A DNA stretch of 64,000 bases from Botryllus schlosseri (GCA_051294905.1 CM119381.1:24552001-24616000), one strand, 5' to 3'. Counted from the first letter of the stretch, positions 13,001-63,221 are shown. Translations and numbers: made by a program. The notes: generated from the letters alone by a model not told the origin.

Positions 13001-16000
13001 ATCAGGCCACCCATGCGTTGATTGCCGCTGGTAAACAGTGTTCAATCTATACAGTTGGTCAGAGAATTGGACAATGTGTTCAGTAGATATGCCACTCCGA
13101 CATTGTTCTCAAATTTCAAATGAAAGTAGCTAGCAAGTCTGACTTGTAACACTGTAATATAAAAGTAACTGTAACTGACCTGTAACACTAAAATATATTA
13201 TGTAAAGTGTTGAGGCACGTTTTATTTGCCATGATTTATCTCTTATATAAACAAGATTTCTCGGATATTTAATTTTCACAGAAGCTACCACCCATCTAAC
13301 AGCCATTCAATGTATTCAGATCCAAAGAAATGAAAAGCAATGGAAAAATTGGTTTGAAAAGGAGGCCCCAGAGGACGCAATTATACCAGACGGATACGAA
13401 GACTCTTTGCGAGTCTTCCATAGATTGCTCCTCATCAGATCTTGGTGCCCGGATCGAACCATGGCCCAGGTAAATCTTGTCATTACCGATTTGGACCTCC
13501 GATTTTATTTATCCTTGTCATCAGTGACAGTGATACAATATCGCAGTACTCAACTTGTCTTTGGTTATTTACGTTAGTTACTAGAGTGGATGTGATTTCA
13601 GATTTTAGATCCACTTCTACGCAACTGTGTGTGAAGTAGAACTGCTTACCTTTTTACAATTTGATGCTTGTAAAGAAGATGGTAGTTTTGCATAGGCTTA
13701 AATCACTTTTACAAGTGAAATTTTCGTGACAACCTTGGGAAATAATCCCTGTGCCACTAGATATTTATGTACAATAGATATATATATGTTATTAGTCAGT
13801 TAATGGCAGCTACGAAGTCGCATCATAACATTTTGGAAGTACTGCCCGCTAACTGCTAAAATTATGCAATACACAGACCAAACCAGCTTTTTGAAACTAT
13901 GTAGCTTTGACCACCTCTGTTTGTACAGAGCCGAAAATACATTGTTGAAACTCTCGGAGAGAAATACGCGGAAGCAGTCATGCTCAATCTCCCCGAGATG
14001 TTGGCGGGTAGCAATTCCAGGACTCCACTGCTGTGCTTCTTGTCGATGGGCTCGGACCCGACCAATCAGATCGAGGCCCTGGCCAAGAAGCAGAAGATCG
14101 AGTGCGGCAACGTCAGCATGGGACAGGGGCAGGAGGTCCACGCCAAGAGATTGCTGCAGCACGCCATGGCACAGGTGAAAATTTGGAAGGAAAATGTATT
14201 TGTGACTCAGCGATGCTAATCCAGCCTAGGTTTTTCTTGTAACGTTATCCGAAATTGACCAAAGAAAAATAAACTCTGGGTTCACAACTCATCCTTGCAC
14301 TATCCTCATCATAATACAACCCATTCAATTTGATCAGGATGCCAATCCATGTTCGGTTACAAGGCTTACACTAAATAGAAAGATAAAGTATATCAAGGGC
14401 CATATGAAGTTAATGTAGTAAAATTTAACTTTTTAGTATAAGATATAATGTATAATATAATTTTCCATTGATACTTTCTGAGGCGTTGCGAATGAATGGA
14501 CATACATGGATATATGTATTATGGAACTATTTTACATCTAAATAAACTCTTGTAGGAACAGAACTTCAATATGCAATTGAATGATATATTCGTATTGAAA
14601 TAAACCTGAATAGTTTCGGCTGACACTCGTCAGGGGTAATCGTCAGGAACTAGTAGAGATTTCAATCTCTGCGTTGATACAAATCAAATGATATCAATAT
14701 CGGTGTACACTGCATGACAGGGTGGTTGGGCACTGTTGCAAAACTGTCATCTGGCGTTGGATTTCATGAACGAGCTCATCATCCTCCTCACCGAGTCCGA
14801 AGACATCCACGATTCTTTCCGCCTCTGGATTACAACGGAAGTGCATCCGCGTTTCCCAATCGGGTTCTTGCAAATGTCGAACAAGTTCACAAACGACCCG
14901 CCGCAGGGGCTGAAAGCCGGATTGAAGAGATCGTACTCGAGTAAGTTAAGCAGGGCTGTGGACTCAGTTCACTTTATATACAACTCAAGAAGACATTTTC
15001 TATTATTATTATTATTACCGAGAAAATCGACCATTCTTTTACCATTGAAAATAATTCTGCTCACATCTCGACAACTTCAAACACACCAACTCTTGCCATT
15101 TTCTTCACAGAATTCTGACTTTGATATTTCTGTACATTTTCCTGAAAAATTAAATGCATATGTCAACTCTAGTTGTTATTACCAAGCGAATCTGCCTTTT
15201 TTTAATTTAAATAATCCTGCTCACAGAAAGAAATTAAGTTTGCGAACGTCTGCCTAAGTGAAAAACTTCATAACATCTGTAACAGCTACTGCACTTTTTA
15301 GTTGGAGTCAGAGTCAGACTTGGACAACTAATCAGATTAATTAGAGCTTAATGCCGGTATTCTAGTTCTAATCTGATTTATGAAATGTTTCTATGCTCTA
15401 GTTTTAATTGTAATCTAATCTCTGCTTTTCCTGAAAAGGCTTCAGGATATCTGTATAGTGTGAAACTAGCTAATCTTGGGGACAGAAATTTGCCATTTTT
15501 CCACATTGCCATCAATTTTCAACTCCCTTTCTCAACCAGCCATCACGCAAGACCAGCTGGAAGTGTCCAACATGCCGCAGTGGCGTCCGCTGCTGTACGC
15601 TGTGGCCTTCCTTCACACGACCGTGCAGGAAAGACGCAAATTTGGCCCGATAGGATGGAACATACCGTATGAATTCAACCAGGCCGACTTCAACGCTACC
15701 GTGCAGTTCATGCAGAACCACTTGGACGACATGGACATCAAGAAAGGACCTTCTTGGAATACGATCAGATACATGATAGGTATGTTTACTTTGTGCTACA
15801 TCAATGTGTCATTTGGCGATTTTTTACTTAAAAACAGAAGATTTTGACCTTGAAGAACTTAATTTAAGTGTTTTCGCACATAATGTTTGAATTGTACTAA
15901 TTAATTATCTTCATTTCTGGTTGGAACTGTTTGGCCGGAAAAAAGTTTTGTGACTTAAAAACTGGCAAATTTTTACATGAAAATACTTTATTTTAACAAA

Positions 16001-19000: not shown

Positions 19001-22000
19001 GACCTGAAAGCGACTGACACGCCGGAAGTGTTTGGATTGCATTCGAACGCCGACATCACGTACCAGACCAAGAGCGCCAAAGGAATTCTGGACACGATTC
19101 TCAGCATTCAACCGAAGGACAGCAGCTCTGGCGGCGGAGAAACCAGGGAGGATTATGTCTACAGATTGGCGAACGACATGCTGGAGAAATTACCGAAACC
19201 ATATGTGCCGTTCGAGGTGAATATCTTTTTCTTTATTTTAATTCAATTAAAGTATTGTCCAAAGGCCTAGTAAATTGAGGTACTCTTACCTTCCTCGATA
19301 CTGACAACAATCTGGTTATAGATGCATGCTAACGTATGTGTTTCTTTCTTCTTTCTGTCAGGTCCGCGAGAGACTCAAGGAAATGGGCATCTTGAAGCCG
19401 ATGAACATCTTCTTGCGACAAGAAATTGACAGGATGCAGAAAGTAAGTTCACCGTGACCCAGGTCTGAAGGGGACAAAACTCAGTGGTGATGCCATAATT
19501 ACCTTTGTGAGGCCGCAACCAGCAGTGTGAAGTAACAAAGTACATCTACTTTTTCAGGGTACTCGAGTAGCTGTTGCTGTTTACTAAGTTTTTACTTACT
19601 TGGCAATCGCTACTTGCAATTCAATAAAAATTTATGACGTTACGCCTACTTCTACTTGAGTTGGAACCAGGGTTGCGGTCAAGTCACAAGTCAACCTTGC
19701 TTTTATAGTTTTGACTGAGTCATTTTTAACTCACCACCGAGGAAAATCCAAGTTTAACTCAGGGAGCATGGTTATGGTGTAGAGACTCGGGTTCGAGTCC
19801 AAGTCGCCGTGTTCACTGTTGATTATCGTGTTCAAATCAGGTGCAACTGTTATTAAACTAATGGGTGATATCAAGTCCTTGCATTCATAGTATACTCATT
19901 TTTCTCACTCTTAACATGTTTTTTCTAACACAGTGGTTCTCAAAGTGGGGGATACTTGGGGGCGGGGTGAGAGCATCTGAAGGGGGGCGCGAAGCTGCGT
20001 TCGTCTGAATATTTTTTCCCCAATTCATACTTATTGTTCTGTGTACGGTCCAAATTTCATATATGAGAATTCTCTCATAAACACTAATAACCTTCCATGC
20101 CATCAAACTATCCGTTGGGGTTGTTACTAGCATTCTGGTTGTATTTTGCTATATGACGATAATGGGGGCGTAAAATTTTTCACTATCATAAGGGGTGGCG
20201 TGTCTAAACAAGTTTGAGAACCACTGTTCTACCAGATAAAATACATTTTCTTGGCCTGTTTTTAAAAGTATTGGTCCTGATACACATGTCTTGAATCAAG
20301 CCATGTAGAATGTCTTGATTCATGTGACTTAGTTGATTCATGTGCAATGAATCGAGTATACAAGTCGAGTCGATACACAAAGTGACTCAGGTCGAGTTGA
20401 ATCATTTTTCATTTATATGAAAATGATTTGAGTCAAGTCAACGAAAAATTTTGACTCGAGTCATTACAACCCTGGTTCCAACAATAACTGCTTTGATAAC
20501 CTAACATACGTTTTATGTGATTTAGGTCATTCGAACAGTCCGCACGACTCTTTCCGAACTGAAGCTCGCAATCGAAGGAACCATCATCATGAACGAAAGC
20601 CTTCGAGACGCCCTCGACTGCATGTACGACGCGCGCATTCCGAAAAAATGGCTCTCCGTAAGTCACACAGTGAAAGTATCACCGATTTGGTTACGTGTTA
20701 ACGCTGAAATTCGCGTTCAGATCTCATGGCCGTCCAGCACTCTCGGGTTCTGGTTCACGGAGCTCATCGAAAGGAACAGCCAGTTCTATAGCTGGTGCTT
20801 CGAAGGAAGACCTAACAGCTTCTGGATGACTGGCTTCTTTAATCCGCAAGGATTTTTGACCGCTATGAAACAGGTGCTGCCAACGCCAATTTTGCTATTT
20901 CGGTGTGTCTAACTGTATAGCGCAGGGCCGGCCAACCCGTGGCCCGCGAGGTAATTGTAGAAATTAGTAATATTACCAAAAATGGATTGCCCAGATTGTG
21001 AACTTGCATGGCCAACCAAAAGTTTGATTAGTCTGGCCGCCACACTTGGGATGTGATGACTAAAATATCAGTTCCGAAGCATTGGCAGATCCATGGGCCA
21101 ATCAAATTTTGGTAGATCTTCGCACATTACAATAAAGCAGAATATTCTGCGGTTGATTTATCTGAAGTAAATTTTTTTCACGCTTCACGCAATATGTTGT
21201 CGCTCGATTTCTTGCCTTTAATATTGTTACCCCCTCCTGAAAATGAAAGAACGCCTAATGTAGCATGCGCTTACGAGAGAAAGCGACGTCCAACATGCGA
21301 CCTTGCGTTTGCGCTCGCAGAAAGACCGTCGACGATGACACATCGGCATAAAATGATTGACGCATGTTGGCCGAAGCTTTCGCTATCGATATGCCCAGGT
21401 GCCGAATAGTCTAGTTCTTGCAAACTGAGCCCAGCAATATACAGCAGACCCGTAATATACTCAAGTAACAATAATGTCGATGCATAAACTTTGAAAAATT
21501 TTCGCGCTTGGCGTGGCTAGTGGCCCGCATGATGGTTGGTCAATGAAATGTGGCCCTTTTGGCGAAAAGGTTGGCCACCCCTGGTGTAACGTTACCATTT
21601 GATTTGTGTTTTTTTTTTGGCATTTTTGAAAGTGGAGGACGCCCAAATTTTCTCGTTTTTGAGAATTTGTTCTCTTTTTTGAAAATTCTGGTCAAATGTA
21701 TGTTAAAATTCAACTGAGATATAGCAAATTAGTACTCATGTAACGTTCCGGCGGGTCATTTTTTGGGAGTTGATTACGAAAGTTGACCTTTTTTTATTTA
21801 TAGTCAAGCAACAGACAATTCAATAAAAGGGTATATTTCTGGATTCGGATAAATTACCTTTTTTTTAGTCAAACAACTATACAAACTCTCAAAAAATTTG
21901 ACCATTTTTCCTGATTTTACTCCTCCGGTATTGTAGGTCTGTAATTTTTGAAAAAGTACGCTCTATTCAGATTCCCAACATATTGTAACCCTACGAGTAC

Positions 22001-25000
22001 GCGGGCCAGACAATTCTAATCGCCTAATTCGACTGATTAGTGCAAAATTCCAACTAAATATAACTTGTGAAATGCTTCCTGTTGTGACCTTGCGAGGAAA
22101 ACCCACCAATAGACATACGGCTTTCTAGGCTTTTATTCACTAAAAGTGTAGACTATGCTACAAAGAATATAAACGTTAAAACAGAAGTAAACCAGGAAAC
22201 ACATGCTACTCTCAGAACGCCCTACACCAGAATGATGAACTAACAGATAGACAAACGCACGAAGTAATTACTAGCGGAAATGAAGAGAAGGTAGACACCT
22301 AACGGATAAATATAACACCACAATCTCCCCAGCCTAAAACGATCGGGCCACTGTACTGAAGTCATGTTGTGCGGTCACCATACCAATCTGGAGCTCGTCT
22401 GATTCTTGATGACCTTCGGATCGGTGGCTCATCAACAGTTGCATCGGAATCGTTGCGACCGATTGAGGTATCGTGGGAGTCGTTTCGAGTATCGACAGGA
22501 GAGTTTGAATGATGATCCGAGGAGTTTTGAGATAATAAACCATTCTGGTCGTTGCTGATTTCGGCAGAACGCAAGTCGACTGCAGGCTCGATGGAACGGA
22601 AATCAAGCCCATTATCGTTCTCTTCACGCGGACACGGGGCTAGATCCTTTACTGATACAGTTGATTCCGTCCCGTTCCTGTGACGAATTAAAGCATATTT
22701 CGGGTTAGCATCTAGAAGCTCTACTCTAACCACTTCGGGATCACTCTTGTTGCGAACAAAGTTCCGTAGCAGCACAGTACCACCGTTTAGTAGCCAATCA
22801 GGTATCGACACACCCAGCATGGATCTGCGATCGAAGCTGAAAAATCGGTCATGAGGACTACAGTTAGTAGACGTGCAGAGTAGAGACCTTATCGAATGTA
22901 AGGCATCGGGTAGGACTTGCTCCCACAACCGTTCAGGCAACCTTTGAGTAGCTAAGCGGAGTTTAATTGCCTTCCAGAGGGTTTGGTTCAGACGTTCACA
23001 CTGAGCATTACCCGTTGGATGATAGGGTGTTGATTTGCTTGTCGCAACACCTTTACGCGTCAGGAAGGCCGTTACGTCTTTCGATAGGAATGAAGCTCCC
23101 CGATCACTGTGGACGTATTCTGGGAGTCCAACAAGAGAAAACAATGAAGACAGGCAATTGATTACAGTAGCAGAGGTCATGTCACGACATGCATAAGCGA
23201 ATGGAAATCTGCTATATTCATCGATTATAACGAGTATAAACCGCTTTGGTCCGGAAACAGGACCTTTAAAATCAATGCTTATACGTTCCCAGGGTCTAGT
23301 GGCTTTGACGAGATGATGCACTTGGTTGGATTTGAAAAACCTCGGTTTAAATTCAGCGCAAACCGAACAATTAGAACAGATCTTTTTGACGTCCTCCATG
23401 GAGAATGGTAGATTTTTCGCTCGAACAAAGTGATGTAGTCGACGGACTCCGGGGTGACTCAGGGCTTCATGAACCTGTTGCAACGACATTCCAGACGACG
23501 ATGAAATAGAACACAAACGAGAAAGTGCATCAGCGCCCACGTGTTCCTTACCAGGACGATGAATAATTTCATAATTCAACGAGCTTAGTTCTAATTTCCA
23601 TATAGATAACTTGCTGTTCTTGATTTTGCTCGGGTGACTTTTTCGGAAAATAAATGAAAGCGCCTTCTGGTCTGTGATCAATTGGAACTCGTTTCTGATC
23701 AACAGATAACCCCATTTTCTGACCGATTCTATAATTGCCAACGCCTCTTTCTCAACAGCCGGATATTTCATCTCGCTTTTAGACAACGTTCGGGACATAA
23801 AGGCGACTGGTCTGCCCCGTTGGCTCAGAATGGCCCCGATGGCGTGGTCTGAAGCATCACATTCGACTTGGAAAGGCTCATCGTCATAAATACAACTTAG
23901 ACAGGCCCGTAATAAGTCCGTTTTCAGAGTATTAATGGCTTCCAGCTGAATGCCAATCAACGGGAATTCGCAATTTTGACATAATGGTTTGATTTTCCCC
24001 GAGAAAGAGGGGATCCACTTTGAATAGTAAGCCATCATCCCCATGAAACGTTTCAAACTGCGATTGTCGTTAGGAACTGGCATGTCGAGTAATGGTTTAA
24101 GATGATCAGGATCTGGCTGAATTCTGTTATGTGATATCAAATGTCCAAGTAATGAGAGTTTTGACACGGAGAACAGACATTTATCTTGATTAAGAGTCAA
24201 TCCCCAATTTGTCGCAGCAGACATGAAGGCTTTAAGCCTTTCATCATGTTCTTTTTGGTTTTCCCCATAAATCGTGACGTTATCAAGATAGGCAACAGTA
24301 CCATTTAGTTTGTGCTCAGCAATGAATTTATCAATGAACCGCTGAAACGCAGCTACACCATTGGTTATCCCGAAAGGGAGACGACAAAATTGATACAACG
24401 ATCCACCAGCTTCAAATGCAGTATATGGCCTATCGGATACAGATAGCGGTACTTGGTGGTAAGCAGATTTCAAATCAATGGTGCTATATACCATTCCTTT
24501 CGCCACGTCGTTCACGATGTTCTCTATTTTGGGCAAAGGGTATGCATCCAGAGGAGTAAACCTATTGATGGTCTGTGAGTAATCGATTACTAACCTCTTC
24601 TTGTGCCGAAAATCTTTCGTTACCAAGACCTGGGCTCGCCAGGGAGACACGGAACGTTCTACTACACCGTCACGCAGCAGTTTCGACAACTCACTCGCAA
24701 TGAATTTCCGGTCATCTGAACTATAATTTCTTGATTTGACAGCTACGGGTCGCACTTCAGGGTCGACGAATTTGAATATTTGAGGAGGTGCGGATACTCT
24801 CGCAGCTGCTACGGCGCAATGTAAACCATTCGAAATGATGAGATCCTTCGATGGTCCGCCAAATTCAAATACAACTTTCCCATGCTGCTTCATGAATTCC
24901 AATCCCAGGATCACATCAGCAATGAGATCTTTAACGACTCTGAATTTGACCTTGCCGTAATTACAGCCCGGTATCTCGAGTGAAGCTTCAATGCACCCGA

Positions 25001-27464
25001 GAACAGTTGTTACGGAGTTCTTCTCTGCGAGTGTGATGGAGTACTTGCGACCAAACGGGCGAAGGCCGAGGAATTTCGATAGGGATTCACTGATATAGCA
25101 TTCATAAGCACCGGAATCTATCAAAGCCTTCACGTTATATTGCGCAACGGAGACGTCGAGGCAAGAATACCGAAGAGAGTCGGGTATTCCAGCAAGTGCC
25201 GAACCAGAGACTAACGAGTTCAACGAGGCAGCAGGTTCTCCTCCGATACGCAATCTGCACACTTTCGCATAGTGTCCCCGCACGCCACAATGAAAGCATG
25301 AAGCATCTTTCGCGGGACAGGATTTCCGTGTTCTTTCGTGAATTTCTCCGCAGAAAATGCACTTCTTCTTCAATGTATTCGCGGCAGGCACATCGCTCTT
25401 GAACGCCGATAAATTGGAACTATTAGCAGATTGATCGCTGTTGACATTCAGAACAGGTTGACTCTGCGGCTCATAGGAACTAGAAAACTTCTGTGCCTGT
25501 TCCAGACACTCTGCAATTTTAATGGCCTTTTCCAGCGTCAAATCGTCATGTTCGAGTAAGCGCAGACGAATAGCTGACGAGTGTAGACCAGTAATTAGTG
25601 AATCCCGTACGGCTTCTTGTCTGTGCTGGTCCGCCGATACATTCTCGAACGAACAATCACGAGCAAGCATGAGCAAATCCTGTGAGAACTCGGTGATAGA
25701 TTTGCCTGGATCTTGTTTCGCAATGGCCAGCAGATGCCTTGCATAAATGACGTTCTTTTTCTTTCGATACCTGGATCGAAGCAGGTCCATTGCTGCCGTG
25801 AAGGTATCTAGCTGTTCGAACAATAAATAGACGTCGGGAGACACATACCCTGTAAGGATCGCCAACTTATCGATGACATGTGCGGGAGGGTTTTCACGAG
25901 AGTTAGGAGGTGGCGTATTTGAAGTCTCAACTGCAGTGATAAAATTGTTGAGCATCTTTTCCCAGTGATTGAAGACCTTTAGGGAATCCGGAGAACTTGG
26001 AAGGATTTCGAGTATTGGCACTCGAATATACTTTTCCTGAGAACCAGCCATGATCTTCAGATTTAGTGAATAAAATTGTTGTGACCTTGCGAGGAAAACC
26101 CACCAATAGACATACGGCTTTCTAGGCTTTTATTCACTAAAAGTGTAGACTATGCTACAAAGAATATAAACGTTAAAACAGAAGTAAACCAGGAAACACA
26201 TGCTACTCTCAGAACGCCCTACACCAGAATGATGAACTAACAGATAGACAAACGCACGAAGTAATTACTAGCGGAAATGAAGAGAAGGTAGACACCTAAC
26301 GGATAAATATAACACCACACTTCCATGCTGTAATTTTAATTCTAATTTAATTTCCGGTTTGTTTAAAAATGCTACAGGAGAGCTTTATAGTGCGACAAGA
26401 GCAGAGCTTGATGTACAGACATTCTTCAGTCTCGTGCTTATGAAGATGGACTCTAATTTGATAGGAACTGAACTTTGTTTTAAATTTCAAGTTTTCACAA
26501 ATTCAGTAATTCTAATTCTATTTTTTTTTTGCGAATCAAGTAAAAGTTTATTATGTTTTTTAATCTAATTTTAAGAGTTTCTTGGAGGTACAGAACTTCA
26601 ATATACAATATACAAATATTTTCACATTAAAATATACCCGAATACTCGTCAGGGTTTAATCGTCAGCAATTAGTAGAACATCTAATTTGGTAAAGACTGT
26701 AGATGTCATTCCAATTCTAATGTTTTTTAAAGAATCTGAATAAATTTAAAATACGTTCAACTCTAATCTATCACATACTGATCCGTGAATGTGTTCTCAG
26801 GAAGTGACTCGCGCTCACAAAGGCTGGGCGCTGGACACGGTCCGCATCTCAAACGAAGTGACCAAGTTCATGAACAAGGAAGACGTGTCCGTACCGCCTC
26901 CTGAGGGGGTGTACGTCTACGGGTTGTATTTGGAAGGCGCCGCCTGGGACAAGAGGGGCATGAAGCTGATCGAATCGCGCTCCAAAGTCCTGTTCGAGCA
27001 GATGCCGATTATTTTGATCAACGCCGTTAGTTCTGGTGAGTAATGACCAGAACTGGTCTGAGTATAGCCATCGTTAGTACTCAAGCCGAGGGGGCATTGT
27101 ATATTTATAATAAAGTACTGCTACCTTCATTTACTACTTCAGCTGTAAGCAGTTTAAATATGTGTTGGAAATCGTTACCTGTAATTGAGTACTCCTACTT
27201 CTAAATGAGGACCAACGAAGACGACTTTGACCACCTCTGTAGAGACTAGGGACATTATTTGTGTAGTAAAATGCGTTAGCTGAGCGATATTACATTTTCT
27301 TTCCGCTACCAGGCAAGCAAGACCCGAGATCGTACATATGCCCCATCTACAAGAAGCCCCAACGCACGGATCTCAACTACATAGCCGACGTCGAGCTCAA
27401 AACGATACAAGGCACCGAGCATTGGATACTACGAGGAGTCGCTCTGTTGTGCGATGTCAAATAA
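1008..27464 (+). CDS. DNAH5: Axonemal outer-arm dynein heavy chain (DNAH5/DNAH8-type, gamma class); 3' part only (AAA4 to C-terminus, ~1669 aa in 30 exons); gene starts upstream of the window
   Basis: GT-AG exons with consistent phases: 1008-1147, 1647-1781, 2187-2310, 2370-2527, 3066-3182, 3751-3933, 4617-4816, 4958-5159, 5845-6012, 6473-6592, 7260-7473, 8165-8268, 8468-8602, 8973-9128, 9511-9693, 10394-10564, 10967-11154, 11652-11842, 11941-12068, 13320-13469, 13929-14174, 14721-14940, 15540-15779, 16922-17091, 19001-19216, 19362-19442, 20526-20657, 20721-20873, 26801-27035, 27313-27464 (TAA 27462-27464). They sum to 5012 nt = 2 + 1670 codons. Motifs: AAA4 P-loop [11 protein letters not shown], stalk [66 protein letters not shown]-terminal [18 protein letters not shown]5 versus DNAH8 orthology cannot be resolved by eye. 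Confidence 0.96.
3498..3695. repeat. Two oppositely oriented fragments of the ~170-nt hammerhead-motif repeat
   Basis: 3498-3563 matches the left half of the repeat (...ttgaaataaacccgaatattttcg); 3620-3695 is the reverse complement of the right half (...ctgacgattacccctgacgagtatcag). Confidence 0.7.
7060..7170 (-). repeat. Copy of the ~170-nt hammerhead-motif repeat (GAAA changed to GAAC)
   Basis: + strand cccgaatatgttcggctgacactcgtcaggggtaatcgtc at 7091-7130, with flanks shared with the other copies. Confidence 0.75.
12461..12945. mobile_element. Non-autonomous DNA transposon (MITE) with long TIRs and TTAA target site, Kolobok-like
   Basis: TTAA|AGGGGCACTGCACCCTAAAAATGATGTGGTCTCAAATTGAA...TTCAATTTGAGACCACATCATTTTTAGAGTGCAGTGCCCCT|TTAA; a second subterminal inverted pair (aacgccaccgtaatggagttgcaatttattgaaa / tttcaataaattgcagctccatcacggtggcgttt); no ORF. 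Confidence 0.85.
14551..14660 (-). ncRNA. Dispersed repeat copy with an intact minimal type I hammerhead-ribozyme core (motif 14601-14640)
   Basis: Minus strand reads ATTACCC-CTGACGA-GTGTCAGCC-GAAA-CTAT-TC-AGGTTTA, i.e. CUGANGA...GAAA...UC in type I order. Activity is not shown; stem II is only 1 bp and the first stem I pair is mismatched in this copy. Confidence 0.5.
17761..18211. mobile_element. GACTC/GAGTC-rich hAT-like MITE, copy 2
   Basis: Ends CAGGGTTATAA...TTACAACCCCG; degenerate 8-bp TSD atatcaag/gtatcgag. Confidence 0.75.
19668..20474. mobile_element. GACTC/GAGTC-rich hAT-like MITE, copy 3, interrupted by a second MITE
   Basis: Ends CAGGGTTG...TTACAACCCTG; flanks gttggaac/gttccaac (6/8 identical). 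Confidence 0.7.
19931..20226. mobile_element. hAT-like MITE nested in the previous element
   Basis: Perfect 14-bp TIR CAGTGGTTCTCAAA...TTTGAGAACCACTG; 8-bp TSD ttctaaca/ttctacca (7/8). Confidence 0.85.
20923..21583. mobile_element. hAT-like MITE
   Basis: TIR-like ends CAGGGCCGGCCAACC...GGTTGGCCACCCCTG; flanks gtatagcg/gtgtaacg (6/8); interior related to 31965-32420. Confidence 0.7.
22080..22322 (-). repeat. 3' LTR
   Basis: 243-bp direct repeat of 26077-26319; adjacent to the polypurine tract. Confidence 0.97.
22323..22334 (-). other. Polypurine tract (plus-strand primer)
   Basis: Minus strand GGCTGGGGAGAT abutting the TG of the 3' LTR. Confidence 0.8.
22362..26051 (-). CDS. Gag-Pol polyprotein, 1229 aa (Gag with zinc knuckles, aspartic protease, RT, RNase H, integrase)
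   Basis: Uninterrupted [12 protein letters not shown] plus [14 protein letters not shown] knuckles (a Mag-like arrangement); protease LIDSGA; [11 protein letters not shown] / LPFG / YLDN; RNase [23 protein letters not shown]; integrase H-H-C-C zinc finger and IDFKGP...SDRG...QCERLN; no chromodomain. Confidence 0.97.
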   Translation of the reverse strand: MAGSQEKYIRVPILEILPSSPDSLKVFNHWEKMLNNFITAVETSNTPPPNSRENPPAHVIDKLAILTGYVSPDVYLLFEQLDTFTAAMDLLRSRYRKKKNVIYARHLLAIAKQDPGKSITEFSQDLLMLARDCSFENVSADQHRQEAVRDSLITGLHSSAIRLRLLEHDDLTLEKAIKIAECLEQAQKFSSSYEPQSQPVLNVNSDQSANSSNLSAFKSDVPAANTLKKKCIFCGEIHERTRKSCPAKDASCFHCGVRGHYAKVCRLRIGGEPAASLNSLVSGSALAGIPDSLRYSCLDVSVAQYNVKALIDSGAYECYISESLSKFLGLRPFGRKYSITLAEKNSVTTVLGCIEASLEIPGCNYGKVKFRVVKDLIADVILGLEFMKQHGKVVFEFGGPSKDLIISNGLHCAVAAARVSAPPQIFKFVDPEVRPVAVKSRNYSSDDRKFIASELSKLLRDGVVERSVSPWRAQVLVTKDFRHKKRLVIDYSQTINRFTPLDAYPLPKIENIVNDVAKGMVYSTIDLKSAYHQVPLSVSDRPYTAFEAGGSLYQFCRLPFGITNGVAAFQRFIDKFIAEHKLNGTVAYLDNVTIYGENQKEHDERLKAFMSAATNWGLTLNQDKCLFSVSKLSLLGHLISHNRIQPDPDHLKPLLDMPVPNDNRSLKRFMGMMAYYSKWIPSFSGKIKPLCQNCEFPLIGIQLEAINTLKTDLLRACLSCIYDDEPFQVECDASDHAIGAILSQRGRPVAFMSRTLSKSEMKYPAVEKEALAIIESVRKWGYLLIRNEFQLITDQKALSFIFRKSHPSKIKNSKLSIWKLELSSLNYEIIHRPGKEHVGADALSRLCSISSSSGMSLQQVHEALSHPGVRRLHHFVRAKNLPFSMEDVKKICSNCSVCAEFKPRFFKSNQVHHLVKATRPWERISIDFKGPVSGPKRFILVIIDEYSRFPFAYACRDMTSATVINCLSSLFSLVGLPEYVHSDRGASFLSKDVTAFLTRKGVATSKSTPYHPTGNAQCERLNQTLWKAIKLRLATQRLPERLWEQVLPDALHSIRSLLCTSTNCSPHDRFFSFDRRSMLGVSIPDWLLNGGTVLLRNFVRNKSDPEVVRVELLDANPKYALIRHRNGTESTVSVKDLAPCPREENDNGLDFRSIEPAVDLRSAEISNDQNGLLSQNSSDHHSNSPVDTRNDSHDTSIGRNDSDATVDEPPIRRSSRIRRAPDWYGDRTT
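26062..26075 (-). other. Non-tRNA primer-binding site complementary to the element's own 5' LTR
   Basis: Minus strand TTTTATTCACTAAA starts 1 nt after the LTR end; it is the exact 14-nt complement of LTR minus-strand TTTAGTGAATAAAA (26141-26128); no TGG-type tRNA PBS is present. Confidence 0.8.
26077..26319 (-). repeat. 5' LTR
   Basis: 243-bp direct repeat; followed by the PBS-position sequence and the gag ATG 25 nt later. Confidence 0.97.
26128..26170 (-). promoter_or_regulatory. LTR core promoter and poly(A) signal: TATA-like box, TTAGT initiator, AATAAA
   Basis: Minus strand TTTATATT (26170-26163); TATA begins 30 nt upstream of the A (26138) of TTAGT, a TCAGT/TTAGT-type initiator; AATAAA at +5 to +10. 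Confidence 0.6.
26586..26680 (-). repeat. Internally deleted copy of the hammerhead-motif repeat
   Basis: ggtacagaacttcaatatacaat...cccgaatactcgtcagggtttaatcgtcagcaattagtag; lacks the GAAA/stem II segment. Confidence 0.65.

Positions 27465-46730: not shown

Positions 46731-63221
<16,491 letters not shown>

What the first reader, a model, noticed from the sequence alone, without database searches (positions are those of the whole stretch)
26062..26170. tRNA-independent self-priming signature: the PBS is the complement of the first 11 nt of the element's own transcript
Seen: 1 nt after the 5' LTR the minus strand reads TTTTATTCACT(AAA), not TGG plus a tRNA complement. Inside the LTR a TATA-like box (TATA at 26168-26165) lies 30 nt upstream of the A of a TTAGT initiator (26138). 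A transcript from there begins AGTGAATAAAA, the perfect 11-nt complement of that PBS (14 nt if the start is 3 nt earlier). Established: S. pombe Tf1 primes reverse transcription with the first 11 nt of its mRNA, released by RNase H, and self-priming has been proposed for related Tf1/sushi elements. Inference: this animal element, with a Mag-like Gag, no chromodomain and a YLDN RT, self-primes through a ~50-nt R-U5 loop. That may be an independent origin or a little-known lineage; I cannot check whether it is already described.
Basis: partly seen in the sequence, partly recalled or inferred. Interest (0 to 1): 0.85.

Follow-up and report, generated by a model that had tools for sequence, protein, structure and literature searches.

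The report
Self-priming Gypsy retrotransposon lineage in animals
This is a young, intact Gypsy-type retrotransposon whose primer-binding site pairs with a piece of its own LTR instead of a tRNA; relatives in molluscs, insects and nematodes share and co-vary this design, so it very probably starts reverse transcription with its own RNA, as yeast Tf1 does.

Summary
One base after the 5' LTR, 26075-26062 (minus strand) is the perfect 14-nt reverse complement of 26141-26128 inside the LTR. No shuffle reached this length.

The element is a 4,240-bp Ty3/gypsy retrotransposon with identical 243-nt LTRs, a 5-bp target duplication and one open 1,229-aa Gag-Pol frame.

The main new evidence is comparative. 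About 28 related families from Mytilus, Papilio, an aphid, Trichinella and unnamed metagenome hosts share the layout: LTR end CA, usually one A, then 12-17 nt complementary to their own LTR. The sequences differ between families. Single-base changes are compensated, including within this family in this genome. That fits Tf1-type self-priming and argues strongly against a shared tRNA primer.

The transcription start is not shown. Four RNA runs gave only 2-9 reads each. Pairing runs to about position 16 in relatives, so "first 11 nt" is unproven.

The element has no chromodomain. I could not run a phylogeny against Tf1/sushi or Mag, so an independent origin is untested. I found no paper describing self-priming in such animal elements.

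The scan reached the same reading earlier on another piece of this genome (s1-234245).

The parts
26320..26324 (-). 5' copy of the 5-bp target-site duplication (GGAAG)
   Evidence: Read directly: the same 5 bases flank both LTRs.
26077..26319 (-). 5' LTR, 243 nt, TG...CA, 100% identical to the 3' LTR
   Evidence: (direct repeat 22080-22322 / 26077-26319, 100%).
26165..26168 (-). TATA-like box 30 nt upstream of A26138. It is not conserved in the sister subfamily or in most related families.
   Evidence: alignment of family copies; related families.
26128..26141 (-). Putative self-primer: a 14-nt LTR segment complementary to the PBS. It contains AATAAA (26134-26129), the likely poly(A) signal when read in the 3' LTR.
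   Evidence: 0/200 shuffles. Compensatory changes.
26084..26127 (-). Predicted hairpin stacked directly on the primer:PBS helix. GCCU (26127-26124) pairs with AGGU (26087-26084), and there is an inner stem 26122-26112 / 26103-26094. It may be the analogue of the Tf1 U5-IR stem-loop. It holds a GT-rich stretch (about 26111-26095) that could be the poly(A) downstream element.
   Evidence: MFE -21.3 kcal/mol, z -3.0. A helix starts right after the primer in 15 of 24 families, against 5.1 expected from shuffled loops. GCC or ACC follows the primer in 16 of 24 families.
26076..26076 (-). Single-base spacer (A) between the LTR end and the PBS
   Evidence: The same CA+A layout occurs in 18 of 24 families.
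26062..26075 (-). Primer-binding site complementary to the element's own LTR, with no TGG
22362..26051 (-). Single open Gag-PR-RT-RNaseH-IN frame of 1,229 aa, with two zinc knuckles, YLDN in the RT (about 24290-24279) and no chromodomain
   Evidence: ORF; Pfam gag-asp_proteas, RVT_1, RT_RNaseH, Integrase_H2C2, rve; nothing in the last 199 aa even at E<=10; best solved relative Ty3 Gag-Pol, 3.6e-60.
22324..22335 (-). Polypurine-tract-like run (AGG-CT-GGGGAGA), one base before the 3' LTR
   Evidence: Similar G-rich runs precede the 3' LTR in L038, L039, L175-L177.
22080..22322 (-). 3' LTR. It carries the same 14-mer at 22144-22131, where its AATAAA would act as the poly(A) signal.
22075..22079 (-). 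3' copy of the target-site duplication (GGAAG)

Best explanation
The element is a recently inserted, apparently coding-competent Ty3/gypsy LTR retrotransposon. It belongs to a compact lineage (about 4 kb, one Gag-Pol frame of about 1,200 aa) that is widespread in animals and replicates without a tRNA primer.

Inferred mechanism, by analogy with Tf1:
1. The genomic RNA starts in the LTR at or just upstream of the segment 26141-26128.
2. That segment folds back over a loop of about 52 nt (the rest of R plus U5) onto the PBS at 26075-26062.
3. A cut after the last A of the segment, at the junction with a stacked hairpin that begins GCC, frees a 3'-OH.
4. Reverse transcriptase extends it across the spacer A, U5 and the rest of R to make minus-strand strong-stop DNA, which then jumps to the 3' R.
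5. Plus-strand strong-stop DNA copies the RNA primer. A change in the LTR segment is therefore written into the PBS of the progeny, which explains the tight covariation.

The same segment carries the poly(A) signal that would be used in the 3' LTR.

Shown: the anatomy, the complementarity, and its covariation and lineage-wide conservation. Inferred: the transcription start, the cut, the enzyme that cuts, and the R/U5 border.
For: 1. Anatomy. The LTRs are identical, there is a target duplication, the frame is open, and the domain order is that of Gypsy.

2. Complementarity. A 14-nt perfect complement begins 1 nt after the LTR, which is where the minus-strand primer must sit. It was reached in 0 of 200-300 shuffles.

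3. Compensation within the family in this genome. A subfamily with LTRs 83-85% identical, including a copy with an open 1,230-aa frame, has G-to-C in the LTR segment and C-to-G in the PBS.

4. Covariation across families.
- 24 distinct primer/PBS pairs have perfect arms of 12-17 nt, and four more were read.
- Each PBS pairs 12/12 with its own LTR. It pairs on average 6.3/12 with other families' LTRs, and 3.5/8 at the variable positions.
- One-step compensated differences occur between close families, for example L047 against L048, L046 against L053, and L041 against L057.

5. Named hosts. The layout is seen in Mytilus edulis, Papilio machaon, Macrosiphum euphorbiae and Trichinella britovi.

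6. Several different PBS sequences coexist in one assembly or sample (the WLWD01 contigs; the Ga0210059 contigs), each matching its own LTR. A shared host primer cannot explain that.

7. Old or broken copies carry mismatches, while young ones are perfect.

8. Folding. The predicted fold puts the primer:PBS helix next to a conserved stacked hairpin. Tf1 needs a comparable U5-IR-like stem-loop (title of Lin & Levin 1998, cited in PMC4600332).

9. The Tf1/Tf2 mechanism, self-primer in R with RT cutting it off, is established (PMC5341516, PMC4600332).
Against: - There is no direct evidence for the RNA 5' end, the cut or the primed cDNA. Four raw RNA-seq runs gave only 2-9 reads on the element.
- Complementarity reaches past the Inr-like A that lies 11 nt from the primer's 3' end, out to about 16 nt. 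The first paired base is usually a pyrimidine, which is unusual for a Pol II start. The exact primer is therefore unclear.
- The host tRNA set was sampled only partly: 46 distinct genes of 6 anticodon types.
- Covariation proves pairing, not priming.
- The distance from the poly(A) signal to the LTR end is very short in some relatives (about 20 nt in Trichinella). That leaves a very small R for the first strand transfer.
Confidence: 0.8

Rival explanations
1. The LTR-PBS pairing is a conserved RNA structure with another role, such as packaging, dimerisation, or a switch between gag translation and reverse transcription. The real primer would be some other molecule.
For: Covariation shows only that the two segments pair. 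The helix ends 10 nt before the gag ATG, and in some relatives it overlaps it, so it could affect translation. No primed cDNA has been seen.
Against: The paired site begins 0-2 nt after the LTR end in nearly all families. That position fixes where minus-strand DNA must start. The leader is only 25 nt, so there is no room for a second PBS. No TGG or tRNA-like site is present.
Confidence: 0.09
2. Priming works in trans. The primer would be the same LTR-derived segment, but from the co-packaged second RNA, from the 3' U3-R copy, or from a separate short LTR transcript, rather than from a fold-back of the same molecule's 5' end.
For: Complementarity extends 1-6 nt upstream of the Inr-like A. That is easier to explain if the partner includes sequence upstream of the main start, as the 3' LTR copy does. 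One broken copy combines the LTR type of one subfamily with the PBS type of the other (L024/L037), as expected if RNAs mix.
Against: A 3'-OH still needs a cut at the same place. The fold-back hairpin with a stacked helix is predicted in most families. In Tf1 the primer comes from the element's own mRNA 5' end (PMC4600332).
Confidence: 0.08
3. An unusual host tRNA, an internal tRNA fragment or another host small RNA primes at this site.
For: Only 6 tRNA anticodon types of this genome could be sampled. Some elements, copia for example, use internal tRNA fragments (from my own knowledge; half-tRNA PBSs in plants are reported in PMC6317226).
Against: - The PBS starts TTTT, not TGG.
- The best complement to any sampled tRNA is 7 nt, against 14 nt to the element's own LTR.
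- PBS sequences differ between related families in the same genome or sample, and each tracks its own LTR.
- Rfam finds nothing in the element.
Confidence: 0.02
4. The match is chance complementarity in AT-rich sequence.
For: Both arms are AT-rich, and the last four positions (TAAA/TTTA) are nearly constant across families.
Against: 0 of 200-300 shuffles reach the observed length. The same layout recurs in about 28 families with different sequences and compensated changes.
Confidence: 0.01

Closest known systems
Tf1 / Tf2 (S. pombe) and Tj1 (S. japonicus): experimentally shown or proposed self-primed LTR retrotransposons
   Same: There is no tRNA PBS. The PBS next to the 5' LTR is complementary to a segment of the LTR that lies in R. 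The mechanism is fold-back, a cut, then extension (PMC5341516, PMC4600332). A stem-loop adjoins the duplex (U5-IR-like in Tf1; the RCCU..AGGY hairpin here). Like Tf1, this element has a single Gag-Pol frame.
   Different: Tf1/Tf2 are fungal chromoviruses with a chromodomain in the integrase; none is present here. Pairing here is 12-17 nt rather than exactly 11. The primer segment here carries the poly(A) signal. The start site and the cut are not mapped here.
Predicted self-priming chromoviruses: fungal Maggy, Skippy, Cft-1, Boty, Grasshopper, Afut1; vertebrate sushi; plant Tcn1 clade
   Same: Self-priming was inferred from the same kind of LTR-PBS complementarity (Lin & Levin 1997 as cited in PMC6934838; PMC6317226).
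   Different: All of these are chromoviruses of the Tf1/sushi-Tcn1 group. This lineage lacks the chromodomain and was found in molluscs, insects, nematodes and, by protein match only, a tunicate. Whether it is sister to the Tf1/sushi group could not be tested.
Plant Ty1/copia TAR lineage (Houba, Osr-1): predicted self-priming
   Same: It shows that self-priming is not confined to one clade and has probably arisen more than once (PMC6317226).
   Different: It belongs to a different superfamily, with a different domain order, and to plants.
Mag lineage of animal Gypsy elements (Mag, SURL, Steamer, C-clade branches)
   Same: These are compact animal Gypsy elements, often with one Gag-Pol frame, short LTRs of 150-250 nt, TGT...ACA termini and a conserved AATAAA in the LTR (PMC3601003, PMC8905726).
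   Different: Described members use tRNA primers. Mosquito Mag elements use Leu, Ser or Arg (PMC3286476). Steamer and the C9/C10 branches have a tRNA-Leu PBS starting TGG (PMC8905726). This lineage does not. Membership of the Mag lineage was not testable, because I had no reference sequences.
Cigr-1 clade (Ciona intestinalis), recalled from memory as a roughly 4.2-kb single-ORF Gypsy element
   Same: The size and layout are as I recall them, and a Ciona protein is among the closest named relatives (56% over Pol). The clade is reported in molluscs (PMC6238403).
   Different: This is a lead only. I could not fetch a Cigr-1 sequence or description, and I do not know what PBS it has.

Membership tests
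Self-priming LTR retrotransposons (Tf1 type, defined by mechanism) | No PBS complementary to a tRNA 3' end | tested here: met
   The PBS starts TTTT, not TGG. The best complement to 46 sampled host tRNAs plus CCA is 7 nt, but that sample is incomplete. PBS sequences differ among related families.
Self-priming LTR retrotransposons (Tf1 type, defined by mechanism) | Sequence directly after the 5' LTR is complementary to a segment inside the LTR downstream of the promoter | tested here: met
   A 14-nt perfect match, 26075-26062 against 26141-26128, starting 1 nt after the LTR. 0 of 200 shuffles reach it.
Self-priming LTR retrotransposons (Tf1 type, defined by mechanism) | The two segments co-vary among relatives | tested here: met
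   A G/C swap in the sister subfamily. 24+4 families with different but self-matching pairs. Own pairing is 12/12 against 6.3/12 for other families.
Self-priming LTR retrotransposons (Tf1 type, defined by mechanism) | The complementary segment is the very 5' end of the genomic RNA | tested here: inconclusive
   RNA reads were too few: 2-9 per run and no starts. An Inr-like TAGT with its A 11 nt from the primer end is frequent (19 of 24), but pairing continues to about position 16.
Self-priming LTR retrotransposons (Tf1 type, defined by mechanism) | RNase H-dependent cut at the 3' end of the primer, and primer found on strong-stop cDNA | not testable with these tools
   This needs biochemistry or cDNA mapping.
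Self-priming LTR retrotransposons (Tf1 type, defined by mechanism) | Stem-loop in U5 adjoining the primer:PBS duplex | tested here: met
   A predicted helix starts directly after the primer in 15 of 24 families, against 5.1 expected. In the window it is GCCU/AGGU. This is a prediction only.
Tf1/sushi group (chromoviruses) | Chromodomain at the integrase C-terminus | tested here: not met
   There is no Chromo hit in the whole protein, nor in the last 199 aa at E<=10.
Tf1/sushi group (chromoviruses) | RT/RH/IN phylogeny groups with Tf1 and sushi | not testable with these tools
   I could obtain no Tf1, sushi or other named reference sequences. The only solved relative is Ty3.
Ty3/gypsy (Metaviridae) LTR retrotransposons | LTRs with TG..CA, a TSD, a PPT, and the order Gag-PR-RT-RH-IN | tested here: met
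   The best solved match is Ty3 Gag-Pol, 3.6e-60.
Mag lineage | Phylogenetic grouping with Mag/SURL, and the tRNA Ser/Leu PBS usual in described members | tested here: inconclusive
   The phylogeny was not testable. The tRNA PBS feature is absent, whereas described Mag and Steamer elements have one (PMC3286476, PMC8905726). The Gag matches no Pfam family.

The most novel reading that the evidence does not exclude
Self-priming may be the ancestral replication mode of a large animal-wide Gypsy lineage that lacks a chromodomain and has never been described as self-priming. In this mode the primer doubles as the poly(A) signal and is cut at the foot of a conserved hairpin. The lineage would have arisen independently of Tf1/sushi and would be invisible to tRNA-based PBS annotation and to tRNA-fragment silencing. 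First-reader notes on this genome hint that a Bel/Pao element may do the same.
Probability: 0.45. Interest if true: 0.7.

Novelty: new variant of a known kind. Interest (0 to 1): 0.6.

Why it matters
Self-primed reverse transcription has been demonstrated only in fission-yeast elements. It has been predicted mainly for chromoviruses and for one plant copia lineage.

- **Breadth.** A diverse, apparently active lineage in molluscs, insects, nematodes and probably tunicates would show that tRNA-independent priming is common in animals.
- **Annotation.** Pipelines that look for tRNA-type PBSs would miss these elements or mislabel them.
- **Host defence.** Such elements would escape defences that target the tRNA PBS with 3' tRNA fragments.
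- **Natural experiment.** The many co-varying primer/PBS pairs, the conserved GCC-hairpin at the presumed cut site, and the very short R-U5 show what a self-primer needs.
- **RT motif.** The frequent YxDN in place of YxDD in the RT of these families is a separate biochemical question.

Tried and rejected
- **RNA evidence for start and poly(A) site.** I laid four raw RNA-seq runs on 21900-26500. Only 2-9 reads per run matched and no starts or ends were listed.
- **Host tRNA catalogue.** RF00005 on the genome returned mostly tRNA-Lys arrays. After fetching 20 more sites I had only 6 anticodon types, so the tRNA exclusion rests mainly on covariation.
- **More families from this genome.** Searches list many families with 39-73% identity and open frames.
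- **Naming the clade.** Source names of relatives are uninformative. The viral-contig scan found nothing. The papers by Levin 1995, Lin & Levin 1997/1998, Springer 1991 and Arriagada 2014 are not held. Only one held paper mentions Cigr-1.
- **Transcript-like contigs as a proxy for RNA ends.** The Logan and ENA contigs I fetched are DNA-type collapses that break at LTR edges.
- **Other checks.** Rfam finds no family in the element. The TATA box is weak evidence for the start, because it is lost in the sister subfamily and in most relatives.


Full report
**What is in the window**

On the minus strand there is a complete LTR retrotransposon of 4,240 bp.
- The two LTRs (26319-26077 and 22322-22080) are 243 nt long, 100% identical, and run TG...CA.
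- The same five bases, GGAAG, flank both ends.
- Between the LTRs lies one open frame of 1,229 aa (26051-22362).
- Pfam finds a retroviral-type protease, RVT_1, RT_RNaseH, the integrase zinc domain and the rve core, in Gypsy order.
- The best solved relative is the Ty3 Gag-Pol polyprotein, at 3.6e-60.
- A purine run ending GGGGAGA sits one base before the 3' LTR.
- There is no chromodomain, even when the last 199 residues are scanned at E<=10.

The copy is therefore young and uninterrupted.

**The observation**

The LTR ends at 26077. A single A follows, and then 26075-26062 is the exact reverse complement of 26141-26128 inside the LTR. The match is 14 nt, or 11 nt if counted from A26138.
- The 14-mer occurs only three times in the window: once per LTR and once inverted at the PBS. 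Shuffles expect 0.06.
- No shuffle of the upstream region gave an inverted repeat this long near the gag start.
- The PBS position has no TGG.
- The leader between the LTR and the gag ATG is 25 nt, so there is no room for another primer site.
- AATAAA lies inside the LTR segment (26134-26129).

**Covariation inside the family**

The genome (495 Mb) holds at least 40 LTR matches. I aligned the 5' LTR plus leader of the copies that keep both parts.
- A subfamily with LTRs 83-85% identical has a G-to-C change in the LTR segment and the matching C-to-G change in the PBS. Its pairing is 15 nt.
- One copy of that subfamily has an open 1,230-aa frame.
- Two older, broken copies carry one mismatch each. 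One of them combines the LTR type of one subfamily with the PBS type of the other.

**Covariation across families**

The Pol region has more than a thousand relatives at about 55% identity. They are compact single-frame elements. Named hosts include Ciona, Mytilus, Biomphalaria, Lepidoptera, aphids, a copepod, Trichuris and Trichinella. I fetched contigs for some of them and scanned metagenome contigs with an alignment of 24 proteins.

Wherever a clean 5' LTR junction was present, the layout was the same: LTR end CA, usually one A, then 12-17 nt perfectly complementary to a segment 28-66 nt upstream in the element's own LTR.
- I counted 24 distinct pairs with perfect arms of at least 12 nt. 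Four more were read.
- Hosts confirmed by name are Mytilus edulis, Papilio machaon, Macrosiphum euphorbiae and Trichinella britovi.
- Each PBS pairs 12/12 with its own LTR. It pairs on average 6.3/12 with the LTR of another family, and 3.5/8 at the variable positions.
- Close families differ by single compensated changes.
- Several different pairs coexist in contigs of one assembly or one sample.
- Old copies with diverged LTRs carry mismatches.

A shared host tRNA cannot explain site sequences that differ between families while each tracks its own LTR. The small host tRNA sample I could obtain gave at most 7 nt of complementarity.

**Further regularities**

[quoted passage not shown] In most families the segment thus ends in a poly(A)-signal-like word.
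- Positions 11, 10 and 9 are mostly A, G and T, which looks like an initiator.
- The three bases after the segment are GCC or ACC in 16 of 24 families.
- Folding the window's RNA from 26141 to 26055 gives the 14-bp helix with GCCU (26127-26124) paired to AGGU (26087-26084) stacked on it. The energy is -21.3 kcal/mol, with a z-score of -3.0.
- With the primer:PBS helix enforced, a helix starting right after the segment is predicted in 15 of 24 families. Shuffled loops expect 5.1.
- This hairpin resembles the stem-loop that Tf1 needs for self-priming (cited in PMC4600332). Here it is only a prediction.

**How it most likely works**

I infer the following by analogy with Tf1/Tf2, where a self-primer in R anneals to the PBS and the element's RT cuts it off and extends it (PMC5341516, PMC4600332).
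1. The RNA's 5' segment folds back on the PBS.
2. A cut at the helix junction after 26128 frees a 3'-OH.
3. Minus-strand DNA copies the spacer, U5 and the rest of R, and then jumps to the 3' R.
4. Plus-strand strong-stop DNA later copies the RNA primer. This writes the LTR segment's sequence into the new PBS and so produces the observed covariation.

The conserved GCC would then be the first template bases after the cut. Their complement would form the 3' end of strong-stop DNA. That last point is my own inference.

**What is not shown**

The start site is unknown. Four raw RNA-seq runs gave 2-9 reads each and no start or end positions. The evidence on primer length points two ways.
- For a start at A26138: the TATA box at -30 and the initiator-like word.
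- Against relying on that: the TATA box is lost in the sister subfamily and in most relatives. Pairing with the element's own PBS stays well above background to position 16 and drops to background at 17. At position 16 it is 15 of 23 against 0.27 for non-own pairs; at position 17 it is 4 of 23 against 0.29.

The primer may therefore be longer than 11 nt, or the start may lie a few bases upstream, between about 26146 and 26138. Priming in trans from the partner RNA cannot be excluded either.

**Comparison with what is known**

- Self-priming is established for Tf1/Tf2.
- It is predicted for Tj1, several fungal chromoviruses, vertebrate sushi elements, the plant Tcn1 clade and the plant copia TAR lineage (PMC4600332, PMC6934838, PMC6317226).
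- Described animal Mag-lineage elements, including Steamer, use tRNA primers (PMC3286476, PMC8905726).
- In six full-text searches that covered self-priming, Mag-lineage elements or primer sites I found no paper describing self-priming in animal Gypsy elements without a chromodomain. The library lacks most subscription journals, so an earlier description cannot be ruled out.
- I could not obtain reference sequences, so the lineage's name (Mag-related, Cigr-1-like or other) and its relation to Tf1/sushi remain open.

**Earlier scan notes**

A follow-up agent working on another, broken element of this genome reached the same reading (s1-234245). Two first-reader notes flag further candidates, one of them Bel/Pao. 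These are not independent evidence. I tested the claim on this element and on relatives myself.

**Verdict**

The self-priming reading is well supported by comparative evidence, at a confidence of about 0.8. The 11-nt primer and the exact start are unproven. It is a known mechanism in what appears to be a new and widespread animal lineage with features of its own.

Noticed in passing
window about 24279-24290 (-), RT motif C: The RT reads YLDN instead of YxDD. Among 120 close homologs, 59 have YxDN and 61 have YxDD. That includes families with identical LTRs and open frames, so the second Asp seems dispensable in this lineage.
   Followed up: partly
G000 genome-wide: The host genome holds at least 150 matches to the Gag N-terminus of this lineage.
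   Followed up: partly
L176 (Trichinella britovi), positions about 1145-1200: Only 20 nt separate the primer segment from the PBS. R plus U5 after the primer is about 19 nt, an extremely short R-U5 for strand transfer.
   Followed up: partly
protein cluster of P0104: Copies from Maniola jurtina and Melitaea cinxia fall in one 90%-identity protein cluster. This hints at recent horizontal transfer between butterflies.
   Followed up: no
L024/L037 = G000:C1:21355396-21359383: A broken copy has the LTR segment of the window's subfamily but the PBS base of the sister subfamily, giving a G opposite G. It could be a recombinant between co-packaged RNAs.
   Followed up: partly
G000:C3:34.49-34.51 Mb: There is a dense array of dozens of tRNA-Lys(ttt)-like genes, and 186 of the 192 tRNA calls in the first sample were Lys. 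It may be a tRNA gene cluster or a tRNA-derived repeat.
   Followed up: no
window 26321-26352 and 23465: In RNA run X22, two reads join 26352 to 26321 with 10 extra letters, right at the outer edge of the 5' LTR. Four reads have unmatched ends before 23465. There are too few reads to interpret.
   Followed up: no
window 26789-27043 (+): The open frame just beyond the 5' LTR looks, from memory, like a dynein heavy chain C-terminal exon. The element may sit in or next to that gene, on the opposite strand. I did not test this.
   Followed up: no
window 14551-14660 and 52853-53572: Other first-reader notes on this window describe a hammerhead-ribozyme-bearing repeat and a triplicated Na,K-ATPase exon. 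I did not examine them.
   Followed up: no
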